Assembly (NCBI GenBank): GCA_002269645.1
Contig: NIVC01001488.1
Span: 54,784 to 118,783, forward strand
DNA from: Macrostomum lignano
Lineage: Eukaryota
Length of the DNA: 64,000 nucleotides
Direction: 5' to 3'
Made by a program: the position numbers and the translations under genes. The notes under the pieces are model-generated. The model saw nothing but the letters and a program-made list of their open reading frames with translations. It made no database searches and was not told where the DNA came from. How positions within the stretch are numbered: position 1 is the first letter of the stretch; every line of letters begins with the position of its first letter. Shown one piece after another: positions 365-24,544 of this stretch.

Positions 365-603
365 GTAAATTTTCAGACAGTACTAGCAATCTACGCCCCC
401 CGTTGGGGAGCCAAAGATATGCTATACACGTTTTTTTAATAAGCTACATGTATCCTTGAAATCTTAAAAAATCTCCTGTCAAACCTTGTAAGCCTTGACA
501 TGTCAGTAATTCCCCCCCCCAGCTTTAACATATCAACTTCCCCCCTTGACATCTCAGCAATGCCCCAATAAGCCTTGGAAATCTAAAAATATCTGTCAAC
601 CTT

Positions 604-635
604 CTAACCCTAACCCTAACCCTAACCTAACCCTA
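604..635. repeat. Interstitial (TAACCC)n tract in A1
   Basis: About 5 units. Confidence 0.85.
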
Positions 636-2640: not shown

Positions 2641-3006
2641 AGTTTTCTTCTTGGTGTTAAAAAGCTTTAATTAAAAAAATTCCACTCTCTAAAAATTCGA
2701 ACCATCGTCCCTGCATTTAGCAGTCAGTCTGTTTACCTCTAGGCTAGCTCTCATCGTTTTGATAATATGAATTTTAGCACTTACTAGCAATCTACGCCCC
2801 CCCGTTGGGGAGCCAAAGAAATGCAATTCACGTTTTTTAATAAGTTACATGTATCCTTGAAATCTTAAAAAATCTCCTATCAAACCTTGTAAGCCTTGAC
2901 ATGTCAGTAATTCCCCCCACAAGCTTTAACATATCAACTTCCCCCCCTTGACATCTCAGCCATGCCCCCAATAAGCCTTGGAAATCTAAAAATATCTGTC
3001 AACCTT

Positions 3007-3061
3007 CTAACCCTAACCCTAGCCTAACCCCAACCCTAACCCTAACCCTAACCTAACCCTA
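3007..3061. repeat. Interstitial (TAACCC)n tract in A2
   Basis: About 9 units, some variant. Confidence 0.85.
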
Positions 3062-3957
3062 AAGCATTGAAATTTCAGTAATTCTCTCTAAGAGTCATTA
3101 TAGCACTACTACAGCATTATAGCGATTCCCTGCAAGCCTCGACATCGTAGGGATTCCCAAATGAATATCTTAACTTCGACATGAAGCTTCTTTTATTTTT
3201 TACATTACGCTTTTTTAATCAGCGATCCCTCCCCTGAGGAGGCATCAAATAATGTAATAAAAAGTTTTCAATAAACTACATGTAGCTTCTGACTTTAGCC
3301 TTGAAATCTCATTTATACCCCCGTGAGCCTTGACATCTCAGCTATTCCCCCCGTAAGCCTTAACATGTCAGCGATGGCACCCATAAACCTTGAAATCTGA
3401 AAAATCCCCTGCTAACCTTGAAACTCGATAAAATATAACCCTCAACCCACACCTGACCTAAACCTAACTTTAACCCAACCTAAAGCCTTGAAATCTCAGC
3501 AATTCTTCTCCCCTAAGCCTTGACATTTTAGTGATTCCTTTAAGAATCACAGCACTATAACGATTTCCACCTAGCTTTGACATCGTAGCAATTCCCAAAT
3601 GAATCTTTTAACTTCGACATGACTCTTCTTTTATGTATACTTAGTGCTACTTTTATTTTTTACATGACTCTTCTTCTATCAGCGCCTCCCGTGGCGAGCC
3701 AACAAAGAATGCAATAAAAAAATTGAGTAAAGTACATGAACTTTGAATTAGCTTCTGACTTTTGCTTTGACATCTCAGAAACCCCCCCCGTAATCTCAGT
3801 TATTCTCTGAGAGCCTTGACGTCTCAGTAATTCTCCCCAGCACAGCATTATAGCTGCATTTAATTTTTCCATGACACCTTTCATGTCTGACATGACGCTT
3901 CTTTTATTCTACTATGATGCTTCTTAATTTTTTAAATGACACTTTCATTAGTTTTTA

Positions 3958-5112
3958 AATGACGCTTCTATGATTTTTCATGACGCTTCTATGATTTTTA
4001 CATGACGCTTCTATGATTTTTTACATGACGCTTCTATGATTGTTTACATGACGCTTCTATGATTGTTTACATGACGCTTCTATGATTTTTTAAATGACGT
4101 TTTTTGATTTTTATATGACGCCTCCATGATTGTTTACATGACGCTTTAATGATTTTTTCATGACGCTTCTATGATTTTTACATGACGCTTCTATGATTGT
4201 TTACATGACGCTTCTATGATTGTTTATATGACGCTTCTATGATTTTTTAAATGACGCTTCTACGATTTTTTACATGACGCTTTTATGATGTTTTAGATGA
4301 CGCTTCTATGATTTTTTACATGACGCTTCTATGATTTTTTACATGACGCTTCTATGATTGTTTACACGATGCTTCTATGATTTTTTACATGACGCTTCTA
4401 TGATTTTTTACATGACGCTTCTATGATTGTTTACATGACGCTTCTATGATTTTTACATGACGCTTCTATGATTGTTTACATGACGCTTCTATGATTGTTT
4501 ATATGACGCTTCTATGATTTTTACATGACGCTTCTATGATTTTTTACATGACGCTTCTATGATTTTTTACACGATGCTTCTATGATTTTTTACATGACGC
4601 TTCTATGATTTTTTACATGACGCTTGTATGATTTTTTACATGACGCTTCTATAATTATTTCATGACGCTTCTACGATTTCTGCAGGACGCTTCAATGATT
4701 TTTACATGACACCTCTATGATTTTTACATGACGCTTCTATGATTTTTACATGACGCTTCTATGATTTTTTATATGACGCTTCTATGATTGTTTATATGAC
4801 GCTTCTATGATTTTTTACATGACGCTACTATGATTTTTACATTACGCTTCTATGATTGTTTACATGACGCTTCCATGATTGTTTACATGACGCTTCTATG
4901 ATTTTTTACATGACGCTTCTATGATTGTTTACATGACGCCTCTATGATTTTTTACATGACGCTTCTATGATTGTTTACATGACGCTTCTATGATTTTTTA
5001 CATGACACTTCTATGCTTTTTACATGATGCTTCCACGATTTTTTACATGACACTTCCACGATTTTTTACATGACGCTTCTATGATTTTTTACATGACGCT
5101 TTTATGATTTTT
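3958..5112. repeat. 22-23 bp minisatellite (A2)
   Basis: Same unit as in A1; bounds approximate. Confidence 0.95.
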
Positions 5113-5944
5113 TTAGTTTTCTTGGCGTTAAAAAGCTTTAATTAAAAAACTCTACTCTCTAAAAATTCGAACCATCGTTTCTGCATTTAGCAGTTCAGTC
5201 TGTTTACCTCTAGGCTAGCTCTCATCGTTTTGATAACATGAATTCAGCACTTATAATTATAAGTTTCAAAACTCCAAGCATAGAGTAAATCACACGAGGC
5301 AGTTATTACATAATCAATTTCTCAGTCAGTCAGTATCAGTTAACAATATGGTTGCGCAATCTAAATCAAGTCTGGTGCTACGCTTCCACACTGCATTTTC
5401 AATACTGTGACGCAATTCAATTCGGAGTTACAATTCAGTTATGATGTAATCCATTTCAGAATCAGAATTCAACCAGTCAGTTTTTTCTCTAGCATTCTTA
5501 CAATGCATTTCAAGTCGAAAAGTTTGCTTGACCTTTGCAAAAAAGCATGTTTTTCGAATATTTAATCGCTTTAACATGGAGCAATTTCTTAGCCAAGATG
5601 CATGTACCGTCCCAGGAAAATTTCTGATCGAACAGTGCAAGTCTCATGAAAATCGGTCCAGCCATTTTTTCTCTAATCGATTGCGTACAAACAAACAACT
5701 CATTTTTAGTATATAGGACTAGCAATCTACGCCCCCCGTTGGGGAGCCAAAGAAATGCAATACACGTTTTTTTAATAAACTACATGTATCCTTGAAATCT
5801 TAAAAAATCTCCTGTCAAACCTTGTAAGCCTTGACATGTCAGTAATTCCCCCCCCCCACAAGCTTTAACATATCAACTTCCCCCCTTGACATCTCAGCAA
5901 TGCCCCAAATAAGCCTTGGAAATCTAAAAATATCTGTCAACCTT

Positions 5945-6005
5945 CTAACCCTAACCCTAGCCTAACCCTAACCCTAACCCTAACCCTAACCCTAACCTAA
6001 CCCTA
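5945..6005. repeat. Interstitial (TAACCC)n tract in A3
   Basis: About 10 units. Confidence 0.85.
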
Positions 6006-6934
6006 AAGCATTGAAATTTCAGTAATTCTCTCTAAGAGTCATTATAGCACTACTACAGCATTATAGCGATTCCCTGCAAGCCTCGACATCGTAGAGATTC
6101 CCAAATGAATCTCTTAACTTCGACATGAAGCTTATTTTATTTTTTACATTACGCTTTTTTTATCAGCGATCCCTCCCAGAGGAGGCATCAAATAATGTAA
6201 TAAAAAGTTTTCAATAAACTACATGTAGCTTCTGACTTTAGCCTTGAAATCTCATTTATACCCCGTGAACCTTGACATCTCAGATATTCCCCCCGTAAGT
6301 CTTAACATGTCAGCGATGGCCCCATAAACCTTGAAATCTAAAAAATCCCCTGTTATTCTGTTAACCTTGAAATCCGATAAAATATAACCCTCAACCCACA
6401 CCTGACCTAAACCTAACTTTAACCCAACCTAAAGCCTTGAAATCTCAGCAATTCTTCTCCCCTAAGCCTTGACATTTTAGTGATTCCTTCTTTAAGAATC
6501 ACAGCACTATAACGATTTCCCCAAGCTTTGACATCGTAGCAATTCCCAAATGAATCTTTTAACTTCGACATGACTTTTCTTTTATGTATACGTAGTGCTA
6601 CTTTTATTTTTTACATGACTCTTCTTCTATCAGCGCCCCCCCCGTGGCGAGCCAACAAATAATGCAATAAAAAATTGAGTAAAGTACATGACTTTGAATT
6701 AGCTTCTGACTTTTGCTTTGACATCTCAGAACCCCCCCCCCCCCGTAATCTCAGTTATTCTCTGAGAGCCTTTACGTCTCAGTTTTTCTCCCCAGCACAG
6801 CATTATAGCTGCATTTAATTTTTACATGACACCCTTCATGTCTGACATGACGCTTCTTTTATTCTACCATGATGCTTCTTAATTTTTTAAATGACACTTT
6901 CATTAGTTTTTAAATGAGGCTCCTATGATTTTTT

Positions 6935-8170
6935 CATGACGCTTCTATGATTTTTACATGACACTTCTATGATTTTTTATATGACGCTTCTATGATTGTT
7001 TATATGACGCTTCTATGCTTTTTACATGACGCTTCTATGATTTTTACATAACGCTTCCATGATTGTTTACATGACGCTTCTATGATTGTTTACATGACGC
7101 TTCTATGATTTTTTAAATGACGCTTCTATGATTATTTCATGACGCTTCTACGATTTCTGCAGGACGCTTCAATGATTTTTACATGCCGCTTTTATGATTT
7201 TTACATGACGCTTCTATGATTGTTTACATGACGCTTCTATGATTGTTTATACGACGCTTCTATGATTTTTACATGACGCTTCTATGCTTTTTACATGACG
7301 CTTCTATGATTGTTTACATGACGCTTCTATGATTGTTTCATGACGCTTCTATGATTGTTTACATGACGCTTCTATGATTGTTTACATGACGCTTCTATGA
7401 TTGTTTTCATGACGCTTCTATGATTGTTTATACGACGCTTCTATGATTTTTACATGACGCTTCTATGATTTTTACATGACGCTTCTATGATTTTTTACAT
7501 GACGCTTCTATGATTGTTTCATGACGCTTCTATGATTGTTTACATGACGCTTCTATGATTTTTTACATGACGCTTCTATGATTGTTTACATGACGCTTCT
7601 ATGATTGTTTATACGACGCTTCTATGATTTTTACATGACGCTTCTATGCTTTTTACATGACGCTTCTATGATTTTTTACATGACGCTTCTATGATTGTTT
7701 CATGACGCTTCTATGATTTTTTACATGACGCTTATATGATTGTTTACATGACGCTTCTATGATTTTTTACATGACGCTTCTATGATTGTTTACATGACGC
7801 TTCCATGATTTTTTACATGACGCTTCTATGATTGTTTACATGACGCTTCTATGATTGTTTACATGACGCTTCTATGATTGTTTACATGACGCTTCTATGA
7901 TTGTTTACATGACGCTTCTATGATTTTTATATGACGCTTCTATGATTGTTTACATGACGCTTCTATGATTGTTTACATGACGCTTCTATGATTGTTTAAA
8001 TGACGCTTCTATGATTGTTTACATGACGCTTCTATGATTTTTTACATGACGCTTCTATGATTGTTTACATGACGCTTCTATGATTTTTTACATGACGCTT
8101 CTATGATTGTTTACATGACGCTTCTATGATTTTTTACATGACGCTTCTATGATTTTTACATGACGATTCT
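6935..8170. repeat. 22-23 bp minisatellite (A3)
   Basis: Same unit, with the ATTGTTTA variant enriched; bounds approximate. Confidence 0.95.
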
Positions 8171-8929
8171 TTTTAAAAAGTCTTTTAGTTTTCCTGACGT
8201 TGAAAAGCTTTAATTAAAAAATTATACTCTATGAAAATCGAACCATCGTCGCTGCATTTAACAGTTCAGTTTGTTCACCTCTAGGCTAGCTCTCATCGTT
8301 TTGATAACATCAAATTTTGCACTTATATAATTCAACACTTTAAAATCCAAGCATAGAGTAAATCACACGAAGCAGTTATGACATAATCAGTTTCTCAGTC
8401 AGTCAGTATCAGTTAACAATATGGTTACGCAATCTAAATCAAGTCTGGTGCTACGCTTCCACACTGCATTTTCAATTCAAGTCGGAGTTACAATTCAGTT
8501 ATGATGCAATCTATTTCAGAATCAGAATTCAACCAGTCAGTTTTTTCTCTAGCATTCTTACAATGCATTTCAAGTCGAAAAGTTTGCTTGACCTTTGCAA
8601 AAAAGCATGTTTTTCGAATATTTAATGCCTTTAGCATCAAGAAATTTCTTAGCCACGATGCATGTACAGTCACGGGAAAATTTCTGATTGAACAGTGCAA
8701 GTTCGAACAAAATCGGTACAGCCATTTTTTCTCTAATCGATCACATAGACACAGACAGACCATTTTTAGTATATAGGACTAGCAATCTTCGCCCCCCGAT
8801 GGGGGACATCTGGATAGAATCTCTGTTCTCTACAATTAACAAAAAGACAGCCAAAAAATCCTTCACAAAGACAACAGACAAACTGCTCAAATGAAGTGAA
8901 TTGCAATAAGAAATCTTCCCAAGACCACA

Positions 8930-9420
8930 AGCATCCCCCAGATAGCAAGCATCCTCCAGATAGCAAGCATTCTCCCAGATAGCAAGCATTTCCCAGATAG
9001 CAAGCATCCCCAAGATAGCAAGCATCCTCCAGATAGCAAGCATCCCCAGATAGCAAGCATCCCCCAGATAGCAAGCATCCCCCAGATAGCAAACATCCCC
9101 AGATAGCAAGCATTCCCCAGATAGCAAGCATTCCGCAGATAGCAAGCATCCCCAGATAGCAAGCATCCCCAAGATAGCAAGCATCCCTCAGATAGCAAGC
9201 ATACCCCAAGATAGCAAGCATCCCTCAGATAGCAAGCATACCCAGATAGCAAGCATCCCCAGATAGCAAGCATCCCCAGATAGCAAACATCCCCAGATAG
9301 CAAGCATCCCCCAGATAGCAAGCATTCCCCAGATAGCAAGCATTCCCCAGATAGCAAGCATCCCCAGAAAGCAAGCATCCTCCAAATAGCAAGCATCCCC
9401 AAGATAGATAGCATCCCCAA
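8930..9420. repeat. 18-19 bp minisatellite CAGATAGCAAGCATCCCC (B1)
   Basis: Direct tandem array; bounds approximate. Confidence 0.95.
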
Positions 9421-9534
9421 ATAGCAACCATCCACCAGACAATAAGTAGCTAGAGCGACAATTTCCTTAGCTTTATAGTGGCTCCTTTAAATTGGCATGG
9501 CGCTTTATACCTTTACATTTGAAATTGGATATCT

Positions 9535-12500
9535 TGAATGTTTGACATGGTGGCTCTTTTATGTTTGACATAGTGGCTCTTCTATGTTTGACATGGTGGC
9601 TCTTTTATGTTTGACATAGTGGCTCTTTTATGTTCGACATGGTGGCTCTTCTATGTTTGACATGGTGGCTTTTTTAGGTTTGACATGGTGGCTCTTTTAT
9701 GTTTGACATGTTGACTTTTTTATGTTCGACACGGTGGCTTTTTAATGTTCGACATGGTGGCTCTTTTAGGTTTGAACCGGTGGCTCTTTAATGTTTGACA
9801 TGGTGGCTCTTTAATGTTCGACATGGTGGCTCTTTTATGTTCGACATGGTGGCTCTTTAATGTTTGACATGGTGGCCCTTTAATGGTTAACATGGCGGCT
9901 CTTTAATTTTCGAAATGGTGGCTCCTTAATTTTCGAAATGGTGGCTGTTTTATGTTTGACATGGTGGCTCTTTAATGTTCGACATGGTGGCTCTTTAATG
10001 TTTGACATGGTGTCTGTTTTATGTTTGATATGGTGGCTCTTTAATGTTCGACATGGTGGCTCTTTAATGTTTGACATGGTAACTATTTTATGTTTGATAT
10101 GGTGGCTCTTTAATGTTCGACATGGTGGCTCTTTAATGTTCGACATGGTGGCTCTTTAATGTTCGACATGGTGGCTCTTTAATTTTTAACATGGTGACTC
10201 TTTTATGTTCGACATGGTGGCTCTTTTATGTTTGACATAGTGGCTCTTCTATGTTTGACATGGTGGCTCTTTAATGTTTGACATGGTGGCTCTATTATGT
10301 TTGACATGGTGGCTCTTCTATGTTTGACATGGTGGCTTTTTTAGGTTTGACATGGTGGCTCTTTTATGTTTGACATGTTGGCTTTTTAATGTTCGACATG
10401 GTGGCTTTTTAATGTTCGACATGGTGGCTCCTTTAGGTTTGAAATGGTGGCTCTTTAATATTTGACAAGGTGGCTCTTTAATGTTCGACATGGTGGCTCT
10501 TTTAGGTTTGAACCGGTGGCTCTTTAATGTTTGACATGGTGTCTGTTTTATGTTTGACATGGTGGCTCTTTAATGTTCGACATGGTGGCTCTTTAATGTT
10601 CGACATGGTGGCTCTTTAATTTTTAACATGGTGACTCTTTTATGTTCGACATGGTGGCTCCTTAAGGTTTGAAATATTGGCTCTTTAATGTTTAACATGG
10701 TGGCTTTTCTATGTTCGACATGGTGGCTTTTCTATGTTCGACATGGTGGCTCTTGTATGTTCGACATGGTGGCTCTTTTAATGGTCGACATGGTGGCTCT
10801 TTAATGTTCTTCATGTTGGCTCTTTTATGTTTGACATGGTGGCTTTTTTATGTTTGACATGGTGGCTCTTTTATGTTCTACATAGCTGCTCTTTTATGTT
10901 CGACATTGTGGCTCTTGTATGTTCGACAGGGTCGCTCTTTTAGGTTTGAAATGGTGGCTCTTTAATATTTGACAAGGTGGCCCTTTAATGTTTAACATGG
11001 CGGCTCTTAAATTTTCGAAATGGTGGCTGTTTTATATTTGACATGGTGGCTCTTTAATGTTCGACATGGTGGCTCTTTAATGTTCTTAATGGTGTCTGTT
11101 TTATGTTTGACATGGTTGCTCTTTTATGTTCGACATGGTGGCTCTTTAATTTTTAACATGGTAACTCTTTTATGTTTGATATGGTGGCTCTTTTATGTTC
11201 GACATGGTGGCTCTTGTATGTTCGACATGGTGGCTTCTTTAGGTTTGAAATGGTGGCTCTTTAATATTTGACAAGGTGGCTCTTTAATGTTCGACATGGT
11301 GGCTCTTTTAGGTTTGAAATGGTGGCTCTTTAATATTTGACAAGGTGGCTCTTTAATGTTTGACATGGTGGCTCTTTAATGTTCGACATGGTGGCTCTTT
11401 AATGTTTGACATGGTAACTCTTTTATGTTTGATATGGTGGCTCTTTTATGTTCGACATGGTGGCTCTTTAATGTTTGACATGGTGGCTCTTTAATGTTTG
11501 ACATGGTAACTCTTTTATGTTTGATATGGTGGCTCTTTAATGTTCGACATGGTGGCTCTTGTATGTTCGACATGGTGGCTTCTTTAGGTTTGAAATGGTG
11601 GCTCTTTAATATTTGACAAGGTGGCTCTTTAATGTTTGACATGGTGGCTCTTTAATGTTTGACATGGTGGCTCTTTTAGGTTTGAAATGGTGGCTTTTTA
11701 ATGTTTGACAATGTGGCTCTTTAATGTTTGACATGGTGGCTTTTTAATGTTCGACATGGTGGCTCTTTTAGGTTTGAACCGGTGGCTCTTTAATGTTTGA
11801 CATGGTGGCTCTTTAATGTTTGACATGGTGTCTGTTTTATGTTTGACATGGTGGCTCTTTAATGTTCGACATGGTGGCTCTTTTAGGTTTGAACCGGTGG
11901 CTCTTTAATGTTTGACATGGTGGCTCTTTAATGTTTGAAATGGTGGCTCTTTAATGTTCGACATGGTGGCTCTTTAATTTTTAACATGGTGACTCTTTTA
12001 TGTTCGACATGGTGGCTCCTTTAGGTTTGAAATATTGGCTCTTTAATGTTTAACATGGTGGCTTTTCTATGTTCGACATGGTGGCTTTTCTATGTTCGAC
12101 ATGGTGGCTCTTGTATGTTCGACATGGTGGCTCTTTTATGTTCGACATGGTGGCTCTTGTATGTTCGACAGGGTCGCTCTTTTAGGTTTGAAATGGTGGC
12201 TCTTTAATATTTGACAAGGTGGCCCTTTAATGTTTAACATAGCGGCTCTTAAATTTTTGAAATGGTGGCTCCTTAATTTTCGAAATGGTGGCTGTTTTAT
12301 ATTTGACATGGTGGCTCTTTAATGTTCTTAATGGTGTCTGTTTTATGTTTGACATGGTGGCTCTTTAATTTTTAACATGGTGGCTCTTTTAGGTTTGAAA
12401 CGGTGGCTCTTTAATGTTTGACATGGTGACTCTTTAATGTTTGACATGGTGGCTTTTCTATGTTCGACATGGTGGCTCTTGTATGTTCGACATGGTGGCT

Positions 12501-13150
12501 TCTTTAGGTTTGAAATGGTGGCTCTTTAATATTTGACAAGGTGGCTCTTTAATGTTCGACATGGTGGCTCTTTAATGTTTGACATGGTGGCTCTTTTAGG
12601 TTTGAAATGGTGGGTCTTTAATGCTTGACAATGTGGCTCTTTAATGTTTGACATGGTGGCTCTTTAATGTTCGACATGGTGGCTCTTTAATGTTTGACAT
12701 GGTAACTCTTTTATGTTTAATATGGTGGCTCTTTTATGTTCGACATGGTGGCTCTTTAATGTTTGACATGGTGGCTATTGAATGTTTGACATGGTAACTA
12801 TTTTAGGTTTGAAATGGTGGGTCTTTAATGCTTGACAATGTGGCTCTTTAATGTTTGACATGGTAACTCTTTTATGTTTGATATGGTGGCTCTTTTATGT
12901 TCGACATGGTGGCTCTTTAATTTTCGACATGGTGGCTCCTTTAGGTTTGAAATGGTGGCTCTTTAATGTTTGACATGGTGGCTCTTCTATGTTCGACATG
13001 GTGGCTCTTTAATGTTCGACATGGTGGCTCTTTAATTTTTAACATGGTAACTCTTTTATGTTCGATATGGTGGCTCTTTTATGTTCGACATGGTGGTTCT
13101 TTAATGTTCGACATGGTGGCTCCTTTAGGTTTGACATGGTGGCTCTTCTA
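9535..13150. repeat. 23 bp minisatellite ACATGGTGGCTCTTTAATGTTTG (B1)
   Basis: Tandem array of ~3.6 kb; bounds approximate. Confidence 0.95.
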
Positions 13151-13914
13151 TTGCGCTTTTTTTATGTTTAGCAGTTTTTTAGTTTTTAAGGTGTTTTAAT
13201 AAAAAAATTATTTTGCGCTTCTAAGACTCGAACCCAGGTCGCTACATTAGCATTCCAGTCTGTTCGCATCAGGGCTATCTCTTTTCAATTGGAGAACATG
13301 AATTGTGGCCCTTATAATTCAATTCTTACAGCAAGTCAATTGGAGTAAAAAGTTATGACATAATCAATTTCTCAGTCAGCCAGTATCAGTCTCACTTCGA
13401 GTTAGCAATATGGTTACGCAATTTCAATCAAGTCGTGTGTGCATTTCTTCGGCACTGTTTTCAACTTGTTGTGATGCAATCTTTATCAGAATTGAAATTC
13501 AGTCAGTCAGTTTTTTCTCTAGCATTCTTACAATGCATTTCAAGTCGAAAATTTTGCTTGACCTTTGCAAAAAAGCGTGTTTTTCGAATATTTAATCCCT
13601 TTAACATTGAGCAATTTCTTAGCCAAGATGCATGTACTGTGCCAGGAAAATTTCTGATCGAATGATGCAAGTTTGAAGAAAATCGGTTGAGCCGTTTTTT
13701 CTGAAATCAATCGCATACCCATATACATACATACATACAGACAACTCATTTTTAGTATATAGGACTAGCAATCTTCGCCCCCCGATGGGGGGCATCTAGA
13801 TAGAATCTCTGGCACTCTACAAGTATCAAAAAGACGGCCAAATAAAGCCTTCACATAGACAATAGAAAAACTGCTCAAATGAAGTGCAATGCAAAAAAAT
13901 ATCCCAGGACAGCA

Positions 13915-14915
13915 AGCAACCCCCCAGATAGCAAGCACCCCCAGATAGCAAGCATCCACCTAATAGCAAGCACCCTTAGATAGCAAGCATCCCCAGATAG
14001 CAAGCATCTCCAGATAGCAAGCACCCCCAGATAGCAGGCACCCCAGATAGCAAGCATCCACCTAATAGCAAGCACCCTTAGATAGCAAGCACCCCCAGAT
14101 AGCAAGCACCCCCAGATAGCAAGCACCCCAAGTAGCAAGCATCTCTAGATAGCAAGCACCCCCAGATAGCAGGCACCCCAGATAGCAAGCATCCACCTAA
14201 TAGCAAGCACCCCAAGATAGCAAGCAATTACCTAATAGCAAGCACCCTTAGATAGCAAGCACCCCCAGATAGCAAGCACCCCCAGATAGCAAGCATCTCC
14301 AGATAGCAAGCACCCCCAGATAGCAAGCATCCACCTAATAGCAAGCACCCCCAGATAGCAAGCATCCACCTAATAGCAAGCATCCACCTAATAGCAAGCA
14401 CCCCCAGATAGCAAGCACCCCCAGATAGCAAGCATCTCTAGATAGCAAGCACCCCCAGATAGCAGGCACCCCAGATAGCAAGCATCCACCTAATAGCAAG
14501 CACCCCCAGATAGCAAGCATCTCCAGATAGCAAGCACCCCCAGATAGCAGGCACCCCAGATAGCAAGCATCCACCTAATAGCAAGCACCCCCAGATAGCA
14601 AGCACCCCCAGATAGCAAGAACCCCCAGATAGCAGGCACCCCAGATAGCAAGCATCCACCTAATAGCAAGCACCCCCAGATAGCAAGCACCCCCAGATAG
14701 CAAGCACCCCCAGATAGCAAGCACCCCCAGATAGCACGCATCTCCAGATAGCAAGCACTCCAAGATAGCAGGCACCCCAGATAGCAAGCATCCACCTAAT
14801 AGCAAGCACCCCCAGATAGCTAGAACCCCCAAGATAGCAAGCATTCCCCCAGATAGCAAGCACCCCCAGATAGCACGCATCTCCAGATAGCAAGCACTCC
14901 AAGATAGTAGGCACC
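13915..14915. repeat. 18-19 bp minisatellite CAGATAGCAAGCACCCC (B2)
   Basis: Direct tandem array; bounds approximate. Confidence 0.95.
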
Positions 14916-14921
14916 CCATTT

Positions 14922-16610
14922 ATGTTTGACATGGTAGCTGTTTTGTGTCTGACATGGTGGCTCTTTAATGTTTGAGCTGGTGGCTCTTTTATGTTTGACA
15001 TGGTGGCACTTTAATGTCTGAAATGGAGTCATGTATACGCTTGACATGGTGACTCGTAGATGTTTGACAAAGTGGCTCTTTTATGTTCGACATGTGGCTC
15101 TTTAATGTTTGACATGGTGGCTCTTTAATGTTTGACATGGTGGCTCTTTAATGTTTGACATGGTGGGTCTTTAATTTATGACATGGTGGCTCTTTTATGT
15201 TTGACATGATGGCTCTTTAATGTTCGACATGGTGGCTGTTTAATGTTTGTTATGTAGTCATATGTATATGTTTTACATGGTGGCTCTTTTATGTGTGACA
15301 TGGAGTCACGTATATATTTGACATGGAGTCACATATGTTTGACATGGTGGCTCTTTAGTGTTCGATATGGTGGCTCTTTAATGTTTGACATGGTGGCTCT
15401 TTTATGTTTGACATAGTGGCTCTTTAATGTCTGACATGGTGGCTCTTTAATGTTTGACATGGTGGCTCTTTTATGTTTGACATGATGGCTCTTTAATGTT
15501 CGACATGGTGGGCTGTTTAATGTTTGTTATGTAGTCATATGTATATGTTTTACATGGTGGCCCTTTTATGTGTGACATGGAGGCACGTATATATTCGACA
15601 TGGAGTCACATATGTTTGACATGGTGGCTCTTTAGTGTTCGATATGGTGGCTCTTTAATGTTTGACATGGTGGCTCTTTAATGTCTGACATGGTGGCTCT
15701 TTAATGTTTGACATGGTGGCTCTTTTATGTTCGACATGTTGGCTCTTTAGTGTTTGACATGGCTCTTTAATGTTTGACATGGTGGCTCTTTTATGCTTGA
15801 CATGGTGGCTCTTTAATGTTCGACATGGTGGCTCTTTAATGTTTGACATGGTGGCTCTTTTATGCTTGACATGGTGGCTCTTTTATGTTTGACATGGTGG
15901 CTCTTTTTTGTTCTACATGGTAACTCTTTTATGTTTGATACGGTGGCTTTTTAATATCTGACATTGTGGCTCTTCTATGTTTGACATTGTGGCTCTTTTA
16001 TGTTTGACATGGTGGCTCTTTAATGTTTGACATGGTGGCTCTTTAATGTACGACATAAAGGTTCGTTTATGTTCGACATGGTGGCTCTTTTAGGTTTGAC
16101 ATGGTAGCTCTTTTATGTTCGACATGGTGGCTCTTTTAGGTTTGACATGGTGGCTCTTTTAGTTTTGACATGGTAGCTCTTTTATGTTCGACATGGTGGC
16201 TCTTAAATGTTTCACATGATGGCTCTTAAATGTCTTACATGGTGGCTCTTTTATGTTTGACAATGTGGCTCTTTAATGTTTTACATGGCGGCTCTTTTAT
16301 GTTCGAAATGGTGGCTCTTTAATGTTCGACATGGTGGCTCTTTAATGTTTGACATGCTAGCTCTTTAATGTTCGACATAGTGGCTCTTTTATGTTTGGCA
16401 TGGTGGCTCTTTAATGTTCTTCATGGTGGCTCTTTTACGTTTGACATGGTGGCACTTTAATGTTCGACGTGGTGGCTCTTTAATATTCGAAATGGTGACT
16501 CTTTAATGTTTCACATGGTGGCTCTTTAATGTTTGACATAGAGTCACGTATTTGTTTTACATGGTGCCCATGTAATGTTTGACATGGTGCCTCTTTTATG
16601 TTTGACATTG
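14922..16610. repeat. 23 bp minisatellite (B2)
   Basis: Same unit as the B1 array; bounds approximate. Confidence 0.95.
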
Positions 16611-16667
16611 TGCTTTTTTATGTTTAGCAGTTTCGTGTTTTCAAGGTGTTTTATAAAAAAATTATTT

Positions 16668-16735
16668 TGCACTACTAAGATTCGAACCCAGGTCGCTACG
16701 TTGGCAGTCCAGTCTGTTCGGATCTAGGCTATCTC
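16668..16735 (-). other. tRNA-like (Pol III box A/box B) module in B2; homologues at ~2685-2750, 5155-5221, 8225-8291, 13213-13281
   Basis: The - strand reads GATAGCCTAGATCCGAACAGACTGGACTGCCAACGTAGCGACCTGGGTTCGAATCTTAGTAGTGCA, followed closely by a T7 run. The acceptor stem does not pair. Confidence 0.6.
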
Positions 16736-17226
16736 TTTTCAATTGGAGTACATGAATTGTGGCCCTTATAATTAAATTCTTACAGCAAGTCAATTGGGGT
16801 AAAAAGTTATGACATAATCAATTTCTCAGTCAGCCAGTATCAGTCTCAGTTCAAGTTAGCAGTATTGGTTACGCAATTTTAATCAAGTCGTGTGTGCATT
16901 TCTTCGGCACTGTTTTCAACTTGTTGTGATGCAATCTTTATGACAATCAGAATTCAGCCAGTCAGTTTTTTTCTCTAGCATTCTTACAATGAATTTTAGG
17001 TCGAAAGAGCTGCTTGACCTTTGCAAAAAAGCATGTTTTTCGAATATTTAATCCCTTTATCATTGAGCAATTTTTTAGCCAAGATGCATGTACCGTCCCA
17101 GGAAAATTTCTGATCGAATGGTGCAAGTTTGAAGAAAATCGGTTGAGCCATTTTTTCTGAAATCTATCGCATACCTACCCACATACAGACAACTCATTTT
17201 TAGTATATAGGATTAGTATATTTAGA

Positions 17227-17695
17227 TTATTATAAGTTTCAAAACTCCAAGCATAGAGTAAATTACACGAGGCAGTTATGACATAATCAATTTCTCAGTC
17301 AGTCAGTATCAGTTAGCAATATGGTTACGCAATTTGAATCAAGTCTGGTGCTACGCTTCCACACTGCATTTTCAATACTGTGACGCAATTTAAGTCGGAG
17401 TTACAATTCAGTTATGATGCAATCTATTTCAGAATCAGAATTCAACCAGTCAGTTTTTTCTCTAGCATTCTTACAATGCATTTCAAGTCGAAAAGTTTGC
17501 TTGACCTTTGCAAAAAAGCATGTTTTTCGAATATTTAATCCCTTTAACATGGAGCAATTTCTTAGCCAAGATGCATGTACCGTCACTGGAAAATTTCTGA
17601 TCGAACAGTGCAAGTCTCATGAAAATCGGTCCAGCCATTTTTTCTCTAATCGATTACAAGCAAGCAAGCAAGATTTTCATTTTTAGTATATAGGA
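17227..17695 (-). mobile_element. Helitron host copy A1, 5' part
   Basis: Resumes with TTATTATAAGTTTCAAAACTCCAAGC, the continuation of GCACTTA seen intact at ~5247-5280, and ends TATATAGGA. Confidence 0.75.
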
Positions 17696-17752
17696 TTTGC
17701 ATGTACTACTATACTTTGGCAAAGCTGATGCATAAGAAATTCAAATTTTCAG

Positions 17753-18952
17753 ACACGGCTGAATGTCGAACAACGTTCTCAGGAGAGGATTAAGTTGGAT
17801 CTAAGAGCTCAGCTATCATCTATCAGCGCTCAAATATAGCGCTGGAGTCAGAGAACATCACTGCAATTAAACTTCCGCCACTCAGGTCCCAAGTGCGGTG
17901 CATGAATTGGAACGATGCTGCTCGGAAATTGAAACGAAGAAGTGCTGAAGCACTTGCTGACAAGCTGCTCGCGCTTAACTACTCAAACAGCGAGTCAAGG
18001 TGCCGCTCTCCCCCTGGCCTACCTCTGACGGAGTTTTTAACCATAGCGAACCGTAAGTGCCAAGCGTTCCAACAAAACATCTACATAAGTTGGTTAACTT
18101 TCAATCCACGCCTTGAATCCCAGGTCCACTACTGAAACTGCTTGGATGCTATGCTGCAAACTCGACCGGCTTTGAGTTCAACTTTACTTGCGGCACCGGC
18201 GGGCTGGTCAGCCACGAGGCCTGCGCCGACTGCTGCGGTCTCCTTGGATACTCGCACATCGGGCTGCAGCCCGGCAGCTGCCTCTGTGGCAACGGCTTTC
18301 CCGGCTCGGGCAACAGCAGTAGCAACAGCAGCATCTGCAACAGCAGCTGCATCAGCAACCGGAAGCAGGCCTGCGGATCGCCGACTGCCGTAACCGTGAT
18401 ACAGATTGCGGACACGGGTGGGTTGTTTGGTTAAAAGTCGCAAAATCTTTATTTTTAAGCATCATTCTACAAGCTAATTCCATATTTTCAGGGATATTAG
18501 TCACAATTGAGTCGGAATAAATAAACTATTTATTTAATTAGAGTTGAAAACAGAAAGTAAGTGTGGCGCAGGGCTTAAACGGGTATAATAACAAGGCAAT
18601 AAATTAGAGGGAGAGGTTGGGTGCAGATAAGAAAAGGAGGGGGTGGAATGCGCGACTGAGGAAAGAGGCGAGACTGAAGAGCCAATCAGAAGGCGTCAAG
18701 GGAGAGAGAGAGAAGAGACAAGACCTGAACAAGACAGAGGGAGAGAAAACAAGTAAACAGATACAAGTGCAAACAAACTGAATAAGTGGCTAAGAAAGCC
18801 GCGAAATTGACGAATCATTCCGCTTACAGAACCGAAGCCTTTGCAAATCGGAAACTTCAGCAATCTGACAGTCTTATCTAACGGGCCGTATTGTTTCTTT
18901 TTGGATGAGCTTGATAAACTGAATGCAGCCTTCTGTGACATTCCGTTTTGCC
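17753..18952 (+). CDS. Kringle domain 1, split over exons 17753-18052 and 18830-18952
   Basis: Six-Cys kringle pattern: ECRTTFSGED*VG..RCMNW..SRCRSP..|..GPYCF..AFCDIPFC. The stop sits at the conserved Tyr of G-x-x-Y-x-G. Confidence 0.8.
18124..18417 (+). CDS. WSC domain exon (294 nt, phase 1-1)
   Basis: cccag| acceptor, |gtgggt donor, stop-free. Reads LLGCY...SHEACADCCGLLGYSHIGLQPGSCLCGNG...ICNSSCISNRKQACGS, with all eight WSC cysteine positions. Missing from the ORF track because this frame has no start codon. Confidence 0.85.
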
Positions 18953-19026
18953 GTAAGTTTTCGAATTAGGCAAAGTTTTAGCTTTAGCTCTTAAAATCGA
19001 TAGTGGCGCTCTTTATTGCATTTCAG

Positions 19027-19581
19027 CTACTGCCAGCGCCTTTGATTGCATAGTAAGCTCCGATGAAGAGGTCGTTCAAAAGCAGCAGCGAGCAAAGTAT
19101 ACTGGTCGAAAAAATGTTTCCTCTACCGGAAAGCCGTGCTTGCCATGGAGCTCGCTTGAAGAAAGCATGTCGAGGCGCTTCTTTTTCGGTTTGTTTGAAC
19201 CGAACAAGTCATTTTGAATTCTGTCTGAAGGCACTGATAAAATCTTTTTTGATTTTTCTTTCAGGACCATACAATTTTCTCGGCTTTGACATTCGAACGC
19301 CCGACTACAGTGAACAAGGTGGCGAAAATTTTTGTCGATCAGTTGAAATCATAGCGGAAGATAGCGTTGAATCCAGAGTAAAACGGTATAATATACGTAC
19401 TTTTCTTTGAACATTGATTAGGTAAATGCATTTGCCTCAAGTCATACGTACCGCCCCTCACGTGGTTGCTTCAGTCGGTATCCGATTGCTTTTTCTGACA
19501 CACCTGTGTGCGCCGTGAACACTGGAGCTGCCGTTGCGTTCGCGAACGTTGAGCTTGAGCCATGCGACATTGCATACTGCT
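19027..19581 (+). CDS. Kringle domain 2 (three exons)
   Basis: FDC..KYTGRKNVSSTGKPCLPWS..|GPYN..ENFCRS..|..TPVCAV..EPCDIAYC. The internal junction near 19377-19475 is uncertain. Confidence 0.8.
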
Positions 19582-19685
19582 GTAATTATGCCAAATGTTG
19601 TAGCTATAGTCGAAGAATAAGAGCGTAATGCAGTCTCAACAACAATAAAATTAACCGCAATTAAACTCTGCGCCCATAGATTCAG

Positions 19686-22160
19686 CAGTACCGACTGTGA
19701 CAGGGGCCATCAGGGACTCGGTCGGGAGCCACCTGCTGGCACGCCAGTTCGGCAGCGACCTCAGTATCAGCCTTGCGAACTGCAGCTTCGCTGGTCAGAA
19801 ATGCACAAAGGATGACTTTTTGAACATTGCCCACCCCCAGCTGGGCATGTGCCATCAGTTTCTCAAGCAGCGTTTCACTGCCAGCATGACCAGCAGGCAA
19901 CAGGCCCAGAGTCAGCTGTCAATCAAGTACTTTACTGACGCAACCGACTCGAAGGGACAGATGGTAGCCAACATGGATCAACTGGCTGGAGTCGTGCACG
20001 GCAGCGTGGATTCCGATGCCAGCCGAATTGCATTCAAGGGAGGAATTTTCGCCTAAACTTTTCAGGGACCAACTTTTCAGGAAACTGGAAACTGATGGTC
20101 CAATAGGAGCTGGGAGACCACAGAGGGGCGCAGCCAGGGGGAGGGCAATGGCACCGCGGCCCCATCCCCAGTAAGTAACAGAAATTATGGTGCCCTTTTC
20201 CAGCTGACTGGCGCCTCCTTCAAGACAGCTTTAGTGCCCCTCACAATGGGTTGGGCACCCTCTGTTCCTAATTTTAGCATTACCTTAACAACTAGTTTGC
20301 CTTTGGCGCCAATGGTACTGGCGCCACTACTGGTGCTGTCGCCCACGAAAAGCACGGATCATCAATAATAAATCCTTGCTTCGCTCTAGGACCTCAGAAA
20401 ACGGAGTAGACGACGAGAAATTATGAACCATGCAAGATTTTCTTCTCTTTTTAAGTCCACCAAGCCGTCTCCCTATCATTGTCTTCATCTTACAGGCGAT
20501 AATCGTTCCGGAGAGCAGCTTCCCCTGGCCATCGAAGGGCATCGACGTAGCCGCTGCTCAACGCATGGATGTGCAGCTGAGACTCGATAAATTCTCCAAA
20601 CTCTCCACCGCTCGGAGACCCTGCTCGGAGGTTCCCGAGCCAATTGTGTACCGGCTACCGTCGTGGAAGCAGGCCGATTCGAACAAGGAATTGGAGTAAG
20701 TGCGAAAGTGCTCTACCTGCCATGGTAGCAAGCACTGTTTTAAGAATACCATTAATTTTGTAATAACACTTCAGCATGAGTACGGATCTTGAGGCGGTAG
20801 TCTCTGCCGCCGATTGGAAACAAAGGCTCGCACACTTTCAAATGATGCTGGAAACTCTGAACAGCTCCAGGTTTGTTTAAGAAAAAAGGCTTCACAAAGG
20901 ACAAATTTTTTAAGTTCCAAATATTTATTGATTTTTAGAGCTTTAACTGGAGTAGACAAAGTATTCAGCTACACTGACATGGAGGACTGCATCAACACCT
21001 ACGTTGTCGAGAAGTTCATCGATAAATGCCGCTGCTTGCCCTCGTTTTTGCCTGTCCGAGCCGATTTCTTTGCAAGACATGCTTACTGCTTCGACACCCA
21101 AACTATGCCAAATATTTCCACGGAAACCGACTTATGCTTCAGGAATCAAGTCGCGAATCTGGTGCAGTACCAGTTCGATGCCGTCAGCCTCTGCAAGGCT
21201 GCGTGCTACACAACTGATTTCAGCGCCCGGCACATTACGTATCCGTGGCCGAATCTGAACAGCTTCCGGTCGCTGGCGTTTTTGAAGAACCTCGCCTTTG
21301 CCCTCGGATACGGCAGCAGTCCGAGTGGCCTCAGGGGAATCAACAGCGTCTACTGCGCCTATTTGAGATCGCTGAACTTCACTCAATCGCCAGCCAGTAT
21401 GAGGAACCCGCTGGACATTCTCAGCTTCGACAGCGAGCTGACGGCACTTCAAAACAGACTTGCCCAGCTAACAGTTCAGGCCTGGACATCGTACGGACAG
21501 GAGGTCTCAGAGGAAGAGGCTTATCCCGCCAAGAACCTTCTGGCTGACATTGGAGGTTAGATAACAAGTTTGCTAACGAAATTGTTTCCTAGTACTCGTA
21601 ACTAAATGTTCGATTCGCTTGTAATTGAAAAACTGGCCCAAAGGTTGTCGTACGATTCACATCCACGAAGGCCAACCCCCAAGGAACCCGGAAGTGTACA
21701 TGTCTGACGATTAGAAAGTCAAGGCCGCTGTTAATCCCGTGTGAGCGTGAGGGAGGCTGGTTCAGCGATTCAAGCCAGTGAAAGCTATCCCTAGCCGGAC
21801 CATTCAAAGCATTGTCGAGTCCAAAGAGGTTTTACTTACGTGCTGTGGCAAATCTTTTTAAGTAAATTTTATCTGCATAAAAACCAAGAAGTTATCGATA
21901 CTTTTTGCAAGTAAACCTTCAATTTTACTTTAGGAGCCCTTGGTCTCTGGTCCGGAATTTCTATTCTGACTGCCTGCGAACTGTTTGAGCTTCTGCTCTA
22001 CTTTGCGCTGGCTGTGGGAGCTCGAATGCGCGAGTGTCGTCAGGCAGCCACCGGCTCTGCTGGGCACCTGCAAGGACCTGCAGTTTTGAGTAGCGGCAGC
22101 AGGCCGACTGTGCGAGCCGACGATGTTGAATTGAAAATTGATGCAGACTCCAAGCTGTGA
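19686..22160 (+). CDS. DEG/ENaC palm, beta-ball, thumb, knuckle and TM2 exons
   Basis: ORFs 19697-20056, 20430-20699 and 20814-21560, plus terminal exon 21934-22160 with GLWSGIS. Confidence 0.92.

Positions 22161-22610: not shown

Positions 22611-24544
<1,934 letters not shown>

What the first reader, a model, noticed from the sequence alone, without database searches (positions are those of the whole stretch)
17753..19581. DEG/ENaC channel carrying two kringle domains and a WSC domain in its extracellular finger region
Seen: between the FPxVTxC motif (exon <1-364) and the QFGSDLSISLANCSF motif (19686 onward), six phase-consistent exons encode kringle 1 (ECR..RCMNW..CRSP..PYC..FCDIPFC), an eight-Cys WSC domain, and kringle 2 (YTGRKNVSSTGKPCLPW..NFCR..PVC..PCDIAYC). 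Established: this interval is the hypervariable finger domain, which carries ligand or protease regulation in FaNaC, ENaC and degenerins. Kringle plus WSC is the pairing found in Kremen receptors; kringles bind proteins and WSC domains are linked to glycan binding. The GIS filter (as in FaNaC) and a small Ala at the degenerin site (LLADIGG) look channel-like. Inference: a family of channels gated by a protein or glycan ligand, or tethered to matrix. I know of no described DEG/ENaC with this architecture, but could not search.
Basis: partly seen in the sequence, partly recalled or inferred. Interest (0 to 1): 0.92.

Follow-up and report, generated by a model that had tools for sequence, protein, structure and literature searches.

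The report
Flatworm sodium channel with kringle–WSC insert
The window holds most of a flatworm DEG/ENaC sodium-channel gene whose outer "finger" region carries a 369-residue insert: one divergent kringle domain split by a WSC sugar-binding-type domain, followed by a second kringle. I found no paper describing this design, and this copy is broken by two stop codons and a lost splice site.

Summary
Six exons (17753-19581), with phase-1 outer boundaries, lie between the post-TM1 exon and the CxFxGxxC exon of a 12-exon DEG/ENaC gene (1-22160, + strand; the 5' end is off the window).

- **WSC:** passes Pfam's threshold. Its best solved relative is the Kremen-1 WSC domain.
- **Kringles:** both fail Pfam's threshold but match a profile of canonical kringles (hhalign 97.6% and 98.5%).
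- **Nesting:** the WSC exon sits inside kringle 1, between Cys3 and Cys4.
- **Conservation:** all 22 insert cysteines and the exon plan are conserved in Macrostomum lignano paralogues. These are 31-55% identical and are auto-annotated as "WSC/Kringle domain-containing".

An exhaustive HMMER scan of 1.84 billion proteins found this architecture only in M. lignano. It also found amphioxus and acorn-worm DEG/ENaCs with other shuffled modules in the finger. No paper describing any of these was found.

The window copy has TAA at two invariant Tyr codons and a GT→GG splice donor. It is otherwise undecayed, so it is either a very young pseudogene or carries assembly errors. The function (ligand, glycan or matrix coupling to gating) is inference only. 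The kringle lysine-binding residues are absent. This is a new variant of a known kind, of moderate to high interest.

The parts
1..364 (+). Exon 1 (5'-truncated by the window edge): TM1 (WVGFLLSTYGGFAYHLSTLF), the beta1-beta2 motif FPDV*ICP and finger helix alpha-1. It contains an in-frame TAA at 133-135.
   Evidence: Pfam ASC N-terminal match. Alignment to the M. lignano gene shows TAC (Tyr) where the window has TAA.
365..17752 (+). Intron 1, 17.4 kb, filled with 23-bp and 17/18-bp satellite arrays. The equivalent M. lignano intron is 110 bp.
   Evidence: Tandem Repeats Finder; M. lignano exon map.
17753..18052 (+). Exon 2: kringle 1, N-terminal part (Cys1-Cys3: ECR..., RCMNW, RCRSP). It contains an in-frame TAA at 17791-17793, at the invariant Tyr of the GEEYxG motif.
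   Evidence: hhalign of K1 with the WSC removed against canonical kringles: 97.6%, E=3e-12. Paralogue alignment.
18124..18417 (+). Exon 3: WSC domain (10 conserved Cys), a phase 1-1 exon nested between Cys3 and Cys4 of kringle 1.
   Evidence: Pfam WSC 35.9 bits, above the 27.8 cut-off. The family profile's best PDB hit is the Kremen-1 WSC domain, E=2.7e-9.
18830..18952 (+). Exon 4: kringle 1, C-terminal part (GPYCFF...AAFCDIPFC; Cys4-Cys6).
   Evidence: Its only PDB hits are kringle C-termini from plasminogen and ROR1; hhalign. It is 79% identical to P0001.
19027..19188 (+). Exon 5: kringle 2, part 1 (DCIV...YTGRKNVSSTGKPCLPW; Cys1-Cys2).
   Evidence: All 60 PDB hits of the K2 profile are kringle proteins. 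hhalign 98.5%, E=3e-15.
19265..19385 (+). Exon 6: kringle 2, part 2 (TPDY...ENFCRS; Cys3). It holds an RVKR motif that is not conserved in paralogues.
19475..19581 (+). Exon 7: kringle 2, part 3 (TPVC...EPCDIAYC; Cys4-Cys6).
19680..20038 (+). Exon 8 (359 nt, the same length as in M. lignano): distal finger helix, the CSFAGQKC strand and the beta-ball. Its donor at 20039-20040 is GG instead of GT.
   Evidence: 78% nucleotide identity with the M. lignano exon up to its last base, followed by gtgagt in M. lignano and ggagga in the window.
20496..20695 (+). Exon 9: palm region (AIIVPESSFPWPSKGIDV...).
   Evidence: tblastn with P0002; gene model.
20775..20870 (+). Exon 10.
   Evidence: Reading frame and splice sites are consistent, and the length (96 nt) equals the M. 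lignano exon.
20939..21555 (+). Exon 11 (617 nt, the same length as in M. lignano): thumb, palm and pre-TM2 LLADIGG.
   Evidence: Pfam ASC C-terminal match, 69 bits.
21934..22160 (+). Exon 12: TM2 (GALGLWSGISILTACELFELLLYF, with the GIS filter), the C-terminus and the TGA stop at 22158-22160.

Best explanation
The locus is the last 989 codons of a DEG/ENaC (ASC-family, FaNaC-like) channel gene. It belongs to a macrostomid-flatworm subfamily in which a 369-residue, 22-cysteine, heavily N-glycosylatable module was built into the finger domain from phase-1 exons.

The module is a divergent kringle whose Cys3-Cys4 loop holds a complete WSC domain on its own exon, followed by a second divergent kringle.

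Shown:
- the gene model;
- the identity and nesting of the three domains;
- conservation of the module and its exon plan across M. lignano paralogues that are only 31-55% identical.

Inferred: intact paralogues form trimeric Na+ channels. The module sits on the finger corner that binds FMRFamide in FaNaC and holds the protease-sensitive element in ENaC. There it would bind an extracellular macromolecule (glycan, matrix or protein) and pass that binding or tension on to the gate.

The window copy is probably not functional as sequenced. It has TAA at two invariant Tyr codons and a GT→GG splice donor. Nothing else has decayed, so the inactivation is very recent, or the lesions are assembly errors.
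For: - **Gene model:** open frames with canonical splice sites.
- **Homology:** E=0 and 51-53% BLASTP identity (52-55% in the MAFFT alignment) to M. lignano proteins carrying Pfam WSC+ASC.
- **Exon plan:** the same plan, with identical exon lengths (359, 200, 96 and 617 nt), occurs in the M. lignano gene for P0002. The 31%-identical paralogue P0009 has K1a 303, WSC 300 and K1b 123 nt exons, all phase 1.
- **WSC:** above Pfam's threshold. Best PDB hit is the Kremen-1 WSC domain, E=2.7e-9.
- **Kringles:** hhalign 97.6% and 98.5% against 17 canonical kringles, versus 0.3% against a WSC negative control. All PDB hits of the K1 and K2 profiles are kringles. The insert profile hits a multi-kringle protein at E=8e-23 in 5.8 billion sequences.
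- **Constraint:** all 22 insert Cys are conserved, and the insert is about as conserved as the channel core. There are ten NxS/T sequons in the insert.
- **Channel core:** closest solved relatives are FaNaCs. The finger helices alpha1-alpha3 form the ligand pocket and drive gating in FaNaC (PMC11026163).
- **Lesions:**. The window keeps 155 of 168 positions (92%) that are invariant in M. lignano paralogues; leave-one-out controls give 85-98%.
Against: - No transcript evidence was available for the window species or for M. lignano. The spliced architecture rests on gene predictions and on frame and phase consistency.
- Both kringles fail Pfam's gathering score and are 129-143 residues long rather than about 80.
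- Two AlphaFold runs gave unusable models (pLDDT 33-35), so the folds and the nested geometry are not structurally confirmed.
- By my reading of the alignment, the kringle lysine-binding residues are absent (CRSPPG, GPYC and TPVC in place of CRNPD.D and PWC), so no known kringle ligand can be carried over.
- The function is entirely inferred.
- The neighbouring actin gene carries a 1-nt deletion in a short nucleotide run. That hints at assembly errors and weakens the pseudogene reading.
Confidence: 0.65

Rival explanations
1. The gene is intact and functional in the animal. The two TAA codons and the GG donor are assembly or consensus errors, or belong to one null haplotype.
For: There are no frameshifts in 2.97 kb of coding sequence. 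92% of family-invariant positions are retained, within the range of functional paralogues. All 22 insert Cys are kept. The adjacent, otherwise perfect actin gene has a single 1-nt deletion in a short nucleotide run, which is typical of assembly error.
Against: All three lesions are substitutions, not the homopolymer indels that are typical of long-read consensus errors. Three independent disabling substitutions in one gene are unlikely from random error. Around the donor, the intron sequence differs at several positions, not just one.
Confidence: 0.3
2. The insert is real, but it does not gate the channel. It would be a structural, trafficking or anchoring appendage, or an auto-inhibitory element removed by proteolysis like the ENaC GRIP domain.
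For: The ENaC finger holds a protease-released inhibitory tract, which is established knowledge and is noted in PMC11026163. The kringle lysine-binding residues are absent. An RVKR furin-type site lies in kringle 2 of the window copy.
Against: The RVKR site is not conserved in any paralogue. The strict conservation of 22 Cys and of K1b (58-79% identity) argues for a folded, selected binding surface but does not say what it does.
Confidence: 0.3
3. Exons 2-7 belong to a separate secreted kringle/WSC gene nested in a long intron of the channel gene and are not spliced into the channel.
For: No RNA evidence was available here. Some M. lignano models (P0022, P0015) lack the WSC or K1b part.
Against: The block has no start codon, signal peptide or stop of its own. 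Its outer boundaries are both phase 1, matching exons 1 and 8. In M. lignano the introns are only 60-180 bp, and two independent annotations (NCBI BOX15 and UniProt/WormBase) join the exons to the channel in several paralogues.
Confidence: 0.03
4. The 'kringles' are chance cysteine-rich spacers, not kringle homologues.
For: Pfam Kringle scores are below threshold, and there is no hit at all for K1. K1 and K2 barely match each other (hhalign 6%).
Against: Each matches the canonical kringle profile over its full length with all six Cys in register. PDB hits are exclusively kringles. BLASTP and HMMER pull out multi-kringle proteins. UniProt itself names two family members 'Kringle domain-containing'.
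Confidence: 0.03

Closest known systems
FMRFamide-gated Na+ channels (FaNaC; PDB 7yvb, 8on7)
   Same: They are the closest solved relatives of the channel core (E=1e-14). TM1 and TM2 match, and TM2 carries GIS at the GxS filter position. The finger alpha1-alpha3 corner is where their ligand binds and gating starts.
   Different: By my reading of the alignment, the FaNaC finger loop at this position is about 35 residues. Here the spacing between the aligned flanks is about 465 residues in P0002, of which roughly 370 are the KR[WSC]KR module. Peptide sensitivity was not tested. The three M. lignano channels tested with peptides by Dandamudi et al. 2022 are other genes.
ENaC subunits with the GRIP domain in the finger
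   Same: A large lineage-specific insertion in the finger regulates gating from outside (established knowledge).
   Different: GRIP is a beta-rich, protease-cleaved inhibitory element, not a kringle or WSC domain. No conserved furin site is present here.
C. elegans degenerins MEC-4/MEC-10 with the matrix partners MEC-1, MEC-5 and MEC-9
   Same: They carry Ala at the degenerin site, a GIS filter and cysteine-rich extracellular additions. The idea of coupling to extracellular matrix is also shared (established knowledge).
   Different: In the nematode the adhesive domains sit on separate proteins. Here binding-type domains are part of the channel polypeptide.
Kremen-1/2 (Kringle-WSC-CUB Dickkopf co-receptors)
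   Same: Kremens are proteins that combine kringle and WSC domains. The Kremen-1 WSC is the best PDB match to the WSC here.
   Different: In Kremen the domains lie in series and are followed by a CUB domain. Here the WSC is nested inside kringle 1, there are two kringles, no CUB domain was found, and no Kremen kringle appears among the 60 listed PDB hits of the K2 profile.
Amphioxus ASC protein XP_035696828.1 (Xlink, F5/8-type-C and a canonical Kringle in the finger) and Saccoglossus ASC proteins with 5-8 LDL-receptor class A repeats
   Same: These are DEG/ENaC predictions with shuffled extracellular modules inserted at the same finger position. In amphioxus a kringle is the last module before the chain returns to the channel.
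   Different: The module sets differ, and neither has a WSC domain. The amphioxus kringle shows no special similarity to K1 or K2, so independent acquisition is likely. They are predicted proteins only.
Fungal Wsc1-type cell-wall stress sensors (WSC domain; PDB 7pz2)
   Same: The WSC fold is shared. In fungi it anchors a membrane sensor to wall glycans (established knowledge).
   Different: Those are single-pass sensors, not ion channels, and the two extra Cys found here are absent.

Membership tests
DEG/ENaC (Pfam ASC, PF00858) | Profile match above the curated threshold | tested here: met
   37.4 and 69.2 bits for the two halves, against a cut-off of 23.6. The intact paralogue P0002 scores 146.6 bits.
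DEG/ENaC (Pfam ASC, PF00858) | Two transmembrane helices flanking a large extracellular domain, with a G/S-x-S filter in TM2 | tested here: met
   TM1 is WVGFLLSTYGGFAYHLSTLF and TM2 is GALGLWSGISILTACELFELLLYF, with GIS. TM2 aligns to FaNaC TM2.
DEG/ENaC (Pfam ASC, PF00858) | N-terminal HG motif | not testable with these tools
   That part of exon 1 lies upstream of the window. It is present in paralogues as TTAHGLGRF.
DEG/ENaC (Pfam ASC, PF00858) | Post-TM1 FPxVTxC motif and CxFxGxxC strand | tested here: inconclusive
   CSFAGQKC is present. The first motif reads FPDV*IC in the window (a stop codon) and FPDVYIC in all paralogues, with Tyr instead of Thr.
DEG/ENaC (Pfam ASC, PF00858) | Uninterrupted reading frame and usable splice sites (a working gene) | tested here: not met
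   There is TAA at 133-135 and at 17791-17793, and the exon 8 donor is GG.
Kringle (PF00051) | Profile match above Pfam's gathering score | tested here: not met
   K2 scores 17.5-17.9 bits against 34.3, and K1 has no hit.
Kringle (PF00051) | Full-length profile-profile homology with six Cys in register (C1...C2xW...CR...C...C...PxC) | tested here: met
   K1 gives 97.6% (E=3e-12, template columns 1-86) and K2 gives 98.5% (E=3e-15). The control against WSC gives 0.3%. All PDB hits are kringles.
Kringle (PF00051) | Triple-loop fold with 1-6, 2-4 and 3-5 disulfides | tested here: inconclusive
   The AlphaFold models had pLDDT 33-35 and are unusable.
WSC (PF01822) | Profile match above threshold, with the eight conserved Cys | tested here: met
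   31.9-35.9 bits against 27.8. The eight canonical Cys align to the Kremen-1 WSC domain, and two extra Cys are conserved.
Kremen-type receptor (KR-WSC-CUB) | Serial Kringle, then WSC, then CUB, with a single-pass anchor | tested here: not met
   The WSC is nested within kringle 1, no CUB hit was found, and the host protein is a two-TM channel.
FaNaC (peptide-gated clade) | Activation by FMRFamide-type peptides through the finger pocket | not testable with these tools
   The only evidence is sequence proximity of the core. The finger is replaced by the insert.

The most novel reading that the evidence does not exclude
The finger of DEG/ENaC channels may be a recurrent docking site for shuffled adhesive modules across Bilateria: flatworm kringle[WSC]kringle, amphioxus Xlink-discoidin-kringle, and acorn-worm LDLa repeats. 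This would define an undescribed class of 'mosaic' channels in which the matrix, glycan or protein-binding partner is built into the pore-forming subunit and directly gates or tethers it. Such a self-tethered mechanosensor or macromolecule-gated Na+ channel could be tested with the intact M. lignano paralogues.
Probability: 0.3. Interest if true: 0.85.

Novelty: new variant of a known kind. Interest (0 to 1): 0.6.

Why it matters
How DEG/ENaC channels sense force and large ligands is a long-standing question. In nematodes and mammals the proposed tethers are separate matrix proteins or glycans.

A subfamily that carries conserved binding-type domains on the gating-critical finger would make that coupling directly testable in one polypeptide. 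Macrostomum lignano is an experimentally tractable flatworm in which RNAi and transgenesis are established.

The locus is also a clean example of exon shuffling. A WSC exon has been dropped into a kringle, which itself was dropped into a channel. The amphioxus and acorn-worm predictions suggest that the same insertion site has been used several times.

Tried and rejected
- **AlphaFold2.** Runs on P0002 (6-sequence alignment) and P0006 (7 sequences) gave pLDDT 35 and 33. No fold search was attempted on them.
- **Word-indexed search with the insert profile.** It returned only 4 proteins and did not widen the census.
- **Source species.**
  - A rootletin-like exon had no M. lignano hit; the best matches were 53-57% identical, from JGI/NCBI records with no organism named and from a mollusc.
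  - Nucleotide comparison with 53 kb of M. lignano sequence showed only 67-82% matches, apart from simple repeats.
  - The window is therefore probably from another macrostomid, but this is unproven.
- **TAA read as Tyr.** I considered this because both internal TAA codons sit on invariant Tyr. I rejected it as unsupported: Tyr codons are one step from TAA, actin uses TAC/TAT, and no other evidence was found. The two gene ends seen both use TGA, so they are uninformative.
- **Derivation from a Kremen-like KR-WSC pair.** Rejected, because K1b completes kringle 1.
- **Prior functional tests.** The M. lignano channels tested by Dandamudi et al. 2022 are conventional FPDVTICN channels and do not belong to this family.
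- **dN/dS.** Not attempted, because synonymous sites are saturated at 52% protein identity.
Full report
**What is in the sequence**

The window is eukaryotic. On the + strand, from base 1 to 22160, lies a 12-exon DEG/ENaC gene whose 5' end is cut by the window edge.

The exons are: 1-364, 17753-18052, 18124-18417, 18830-18952, 19027-19188, 19265-19385, 19475-19581, 19680-20038, 20496-20695, 20775-20870, 20939-21555 and 21934-22160. The stop codon is TGA.

Every acceptor is AG, and every donor but one is GT. The six exons named in the finding add up to 1107 nt (369 codons). All their boundaries are phase 1 except one internal junction, so the block is a symmetric phase 1-1 insert between exon 1 and exon 8. 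Exon 1 encodes TM1, FPDV*IC and a helix. Exon 8 encodes a helix, CSFAGQKC and the beta-ball.

Intron 1 is 17.4 kb of satellite arrays.

**Is it more than chance?**

The spliced product matches Macrostomum lignano proteins at E=0. BLASTP identity is 51-53% over 92-96% of the query. Their precomputed Pfam content is WSC plus ASC.

I mapped one of them, P0002 (BOX15_Mlig006056g1), onto its contig. It has the same exon plan, with exon lengths 303/292/122/165/142/134 for the insert. The downstream exons are 359, 200, 96 and 617 nt, identical to the window, and the introns are 60-180 bp. A paralogue only 31% identical (P0009) again has K1a 303, WSC 300 and K1b 123 nt exons, all phase 1.

By homology, exon 8 begins at 19680, not 19686. 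This gives CYSAVPTVTG, compared with CYAAVPSVTG in P0001, and an exon of 359 nt as in M. lignano.

**Domain identities**

*Pfam on the window model*

| Domain | Score | Cut-off |
|---|---|---|
| ASC | 37 and 69 bits | 23.6 |
| WSC | 31.9-35.9 bits | 27.8 |
| Kringle (first half of kringle 2 only) | 17.5-17.9 bits | 34.3 |
| Kringle 1 | no hit | 34.3 |

*Kringle tests*

- I built family profiles from the window and its paralogues.
- The kringle-2 profile hits 60 PDB sequences at E≤10. All are kringle proteins: prothrombin, tPA, HGF, ROR1/2, uPA, plasminogen and apo(a). The best is E=0.002.
- The kringle-1 profile, with the WSC exon removed, hits three sequences, all kringle C-termini.
- Against a profile of 17 canonical kringles taken from multi-kringle proteins, hhalign gives 97.6% (E=3e-12, template columns 1-86) for kringle 1 and 98.5% (E=3e-15) for kringle 2. 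All six cysteines are in register.
- A negative control against the WSC profile gives 0.3%.
- K1 and K2 barely match each other directly (6%). They are old, divergent copies.
- The full-length family profile pulled multi-kringle proteins from 1.84 billion sequences at its kringle-2 positions.
- The insert profile hit one multi-kringle protein at E=8e-23 in a 5.8-billion-sequence database.

*WSC and nesting*

The best solved relative of the WSC profile is the Kremen-1 WSC domain (E=2.7e-9), followed by a fungal WSC.

The kringle-1 alignment places the WSC exon exactly in the Cys3-Cys4 loop, between CRSPPG... and ...GPYCFF. The WSC is therefore a domain nested inside a kringle, which is itself nested inside the channel's finger. 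It is not a serial K-WSC-K array.

The WSC exon has ten conserved cysteines: the canonical eight plus two more.

**Conservation**

- All 22 cysteines of the insert are conserved in the paralogues (21 invariant; one is Ser in P0005).
- Identity of the window to P0001 is 52% for K1a, 57% for WSC, 79% for K1b and 39% for K2. Channel segments are 54-75% identical.
- The insert carries ten NxS/T sequons, as expected for an extracellular module.

**Position in the channel**

The closest solved relatives of the core are FaNaCs (7yvb, E=1e-14; 8on7), ahead of ASIC, PPK and ENaC. In that alignment, by my reading, the FaNaC segment between about residue 160 and residue 196 corresponds to about residues 107-571 of P0002.

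The module therefore sits between finger helix alpha-1 and the helix that precedes the CxFxGxxC strand. In FaNaC1, the alpha1-alpha3 finger helices form the FMRFamide pocket, and their movement starts gating. [quoted passage not shown]

**State of this copy**

There are three lesions:

1. TAA at 133-135, where M. lignano has TAC. This is the Tyr of FPDVYICP, invariant in all paralogues.
2. TAA at 17791-17793, at the invariant Tyr of the kringle GEEYxG motif.
3. The exon 8 donor is GG, where the M. lignano gene has GT at the homologous base. The nearest in-phase GT (19964) would delete 25 conserved residues.

Against long decay:

- There is no frameshift in 2.97 kb of coding sequence.
- The window keeps 155 of 168 positions (92%) that are invariant in five M. 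lignano sequences. Leave-one-out controls give 85-98%.
- The neighbouring actin gene is perfect except for a 1-nt deletion in a short nucleotide run. That could mean the assembly has errors.

My estimate is about 0.6 that this is a very young pseudogene or null allele, and about 0.3 that the lesions are errors in an intact gene.

**Distribution and novelty**

An exhaustive HMMER scan of 1.84 billion cluster representatives found insert-bearing ASC proteins only from M. lignano. There are at least eight divergent groups. UniProt names them 'WSC domain-containing', 'Kringle domain-containing' or 'Amiloride-sensitive sodium channel'. Only the best 150 of 1,225 hits were listed and examined. Two models (P0022 and P0015/P0165) lack the WSC. 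That may be real or may reflect a skipped symmetric exon.

The window species is probably not M. lignano. A rootletin-like exon found no M. lignano protein, and there are no near-identical repeats in 53 kb of M. lignano DNA.

The same scan also turned up two other cases:

- An amphioxus ASC protein (XP_035696828.1, with orthologues in three Branchiostoma species) carries link domains, a discoidin domain and a canonical kringle (91 bits) in the finger.
- Saccoglossus ASC proteins carry 5-8 LDL-receptor class A repeats at the same place.

The amphioxus kringle shows no special affinity to K1 or K2, so independent shuffling is likely.

Full-text searches found no paper linking ENaC, degenerin or ASIC channels with kringle or WSC domains as an architecture. 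The three M. lignano DEG/ENaCs tested with peptides by Dandamudi et al. 2022 are conventional channels, not this family. The architecture is thus visible in databases but undescribed. I class it as a new variant of a known kind.

**How it most likely works (inference)**

Intact paralogues should form trimeric Na+-selective channels of the FaNaC/degenerin type. They have the HG motif, a GIS filter and Ala at the degenerin site.

Each subunit would project a disulfide-locked, glycosylated KR[WSC]KR module from the finger. WSC domains bind glycans in fungi, and kringles are protein-binding modules. The most economical reading is therefore that the module binds an extracellular macromolecule and passes that binding, or tension on it, to the finger helices that drive gating.

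By my reading of the alignment, the kringle lysine-binding residues are absent: CRSPPG, GPYC and TPVC stand in place of CRNPD.D and PWC. Plasminogen-type ligands cannot be assumed.

The rival functions cannot be excluded with sequence alone:

- A passive anchoring or trafficking appendage.
- An ENaC-GRIP-like inhibitory element. The RVKR site in the window copy is not conserved in paralogues.

**What failed**

Both AlphaFold runs were unusable, so the folds and the nested geometry remain sequence-based inferences.

Noticed in passing
window 22900-24544 (+), frameshift near 23700-23712: An actin gene is otherwise perfectly conserved but has a 1-nt deletion in a short nucleotide run (GTGGCCCCGAGGAG). 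This shifts the frame between ELRVAP and EEHPVLL. It is either an assembly indel error or a very young pseudogene, and it bears on how far to trust the channel-gene lesions.
   Followed up: partly
window 133-135 and 17791-17793: Both internal TAA codons of the channel gene fall on Tyr codons that are invariant in all paralogues (TAC in M. lignano at the first site). The two gene ends seen in the window (channel and actin) both use TGA. This is most simply explained by single-step nonsense mutations. Recoding was considered and found unsupported.
   Followed up: partly
window 365-17752: Intron 1 has expanded to 17.4 kb. It holds long arrays of 23-bp satellites (ACATGACGCTTCTATGATTTTTT and TCTTTAATGTTTGACATGGTGGC), 17/18-bp satellites, and short (CCCTAA)n telomere-like runs near 600-640. 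The homologous M. lignano intron is 110 bp.
   Followed up: partly
window 21648-21749 and 43062-43239; L001 12340-12547 and 17677-17773: A dispersed 100-200-bp repeat is shared at 72-77% identity with an M. lignano contig. It lies in the last intron of the channel gene and in an intron of the coiled-coil gene. It is probably an old SINE- or MITE-like family common to macrostomids.
   Followed up: no
window ~33000-48600 (-): A large multi-exon rootletin-like coiled-coil gene. One 358-residue exon has best hits of only 53-57% identity (records with no organism named, and a mollusc) and no M. lignano hit. This suggests the window is not from M. lignano.
   Followed up: partly
window 19370-19381 (codons 452-455 of the model): There is an RVKR furin-type motif in kringle 2 of this copy. 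It is not conserved in any M. lignano paralogue.
   Followed up: yes
P0098 (Branchiostoma floridae XP_035696828.1); P0106 and P0047 (Saccoglossus kowalevskii): These are DEG/ENaC predictions from deuterostomes with other shuffled modules in the finger: Xlink repeats, F5/8-type-C and a canonical kringle in amphioxus, and 5-8 LDL-receptor class A repeats in the acorn worm. I found no literature on them.
   Followed up: partly
P0022 and P0015/P0165 (M. lignano): These family members have models that lack the WSC exon, and in P0015 also the C-terminal part of kringle 1. They are either true WSC-less paralogues or isoforms (the WSC exon is symmetric, phase 1-1), or prediction gaps.
   Followed up: no
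window 23040-23580, 35400-37000, 51200-52800 and elsewhere: Many long microsatellite and minisatellite arrays produce spurious long ORFs in several frames. One lies in the first actin intron.
   Followed up: no
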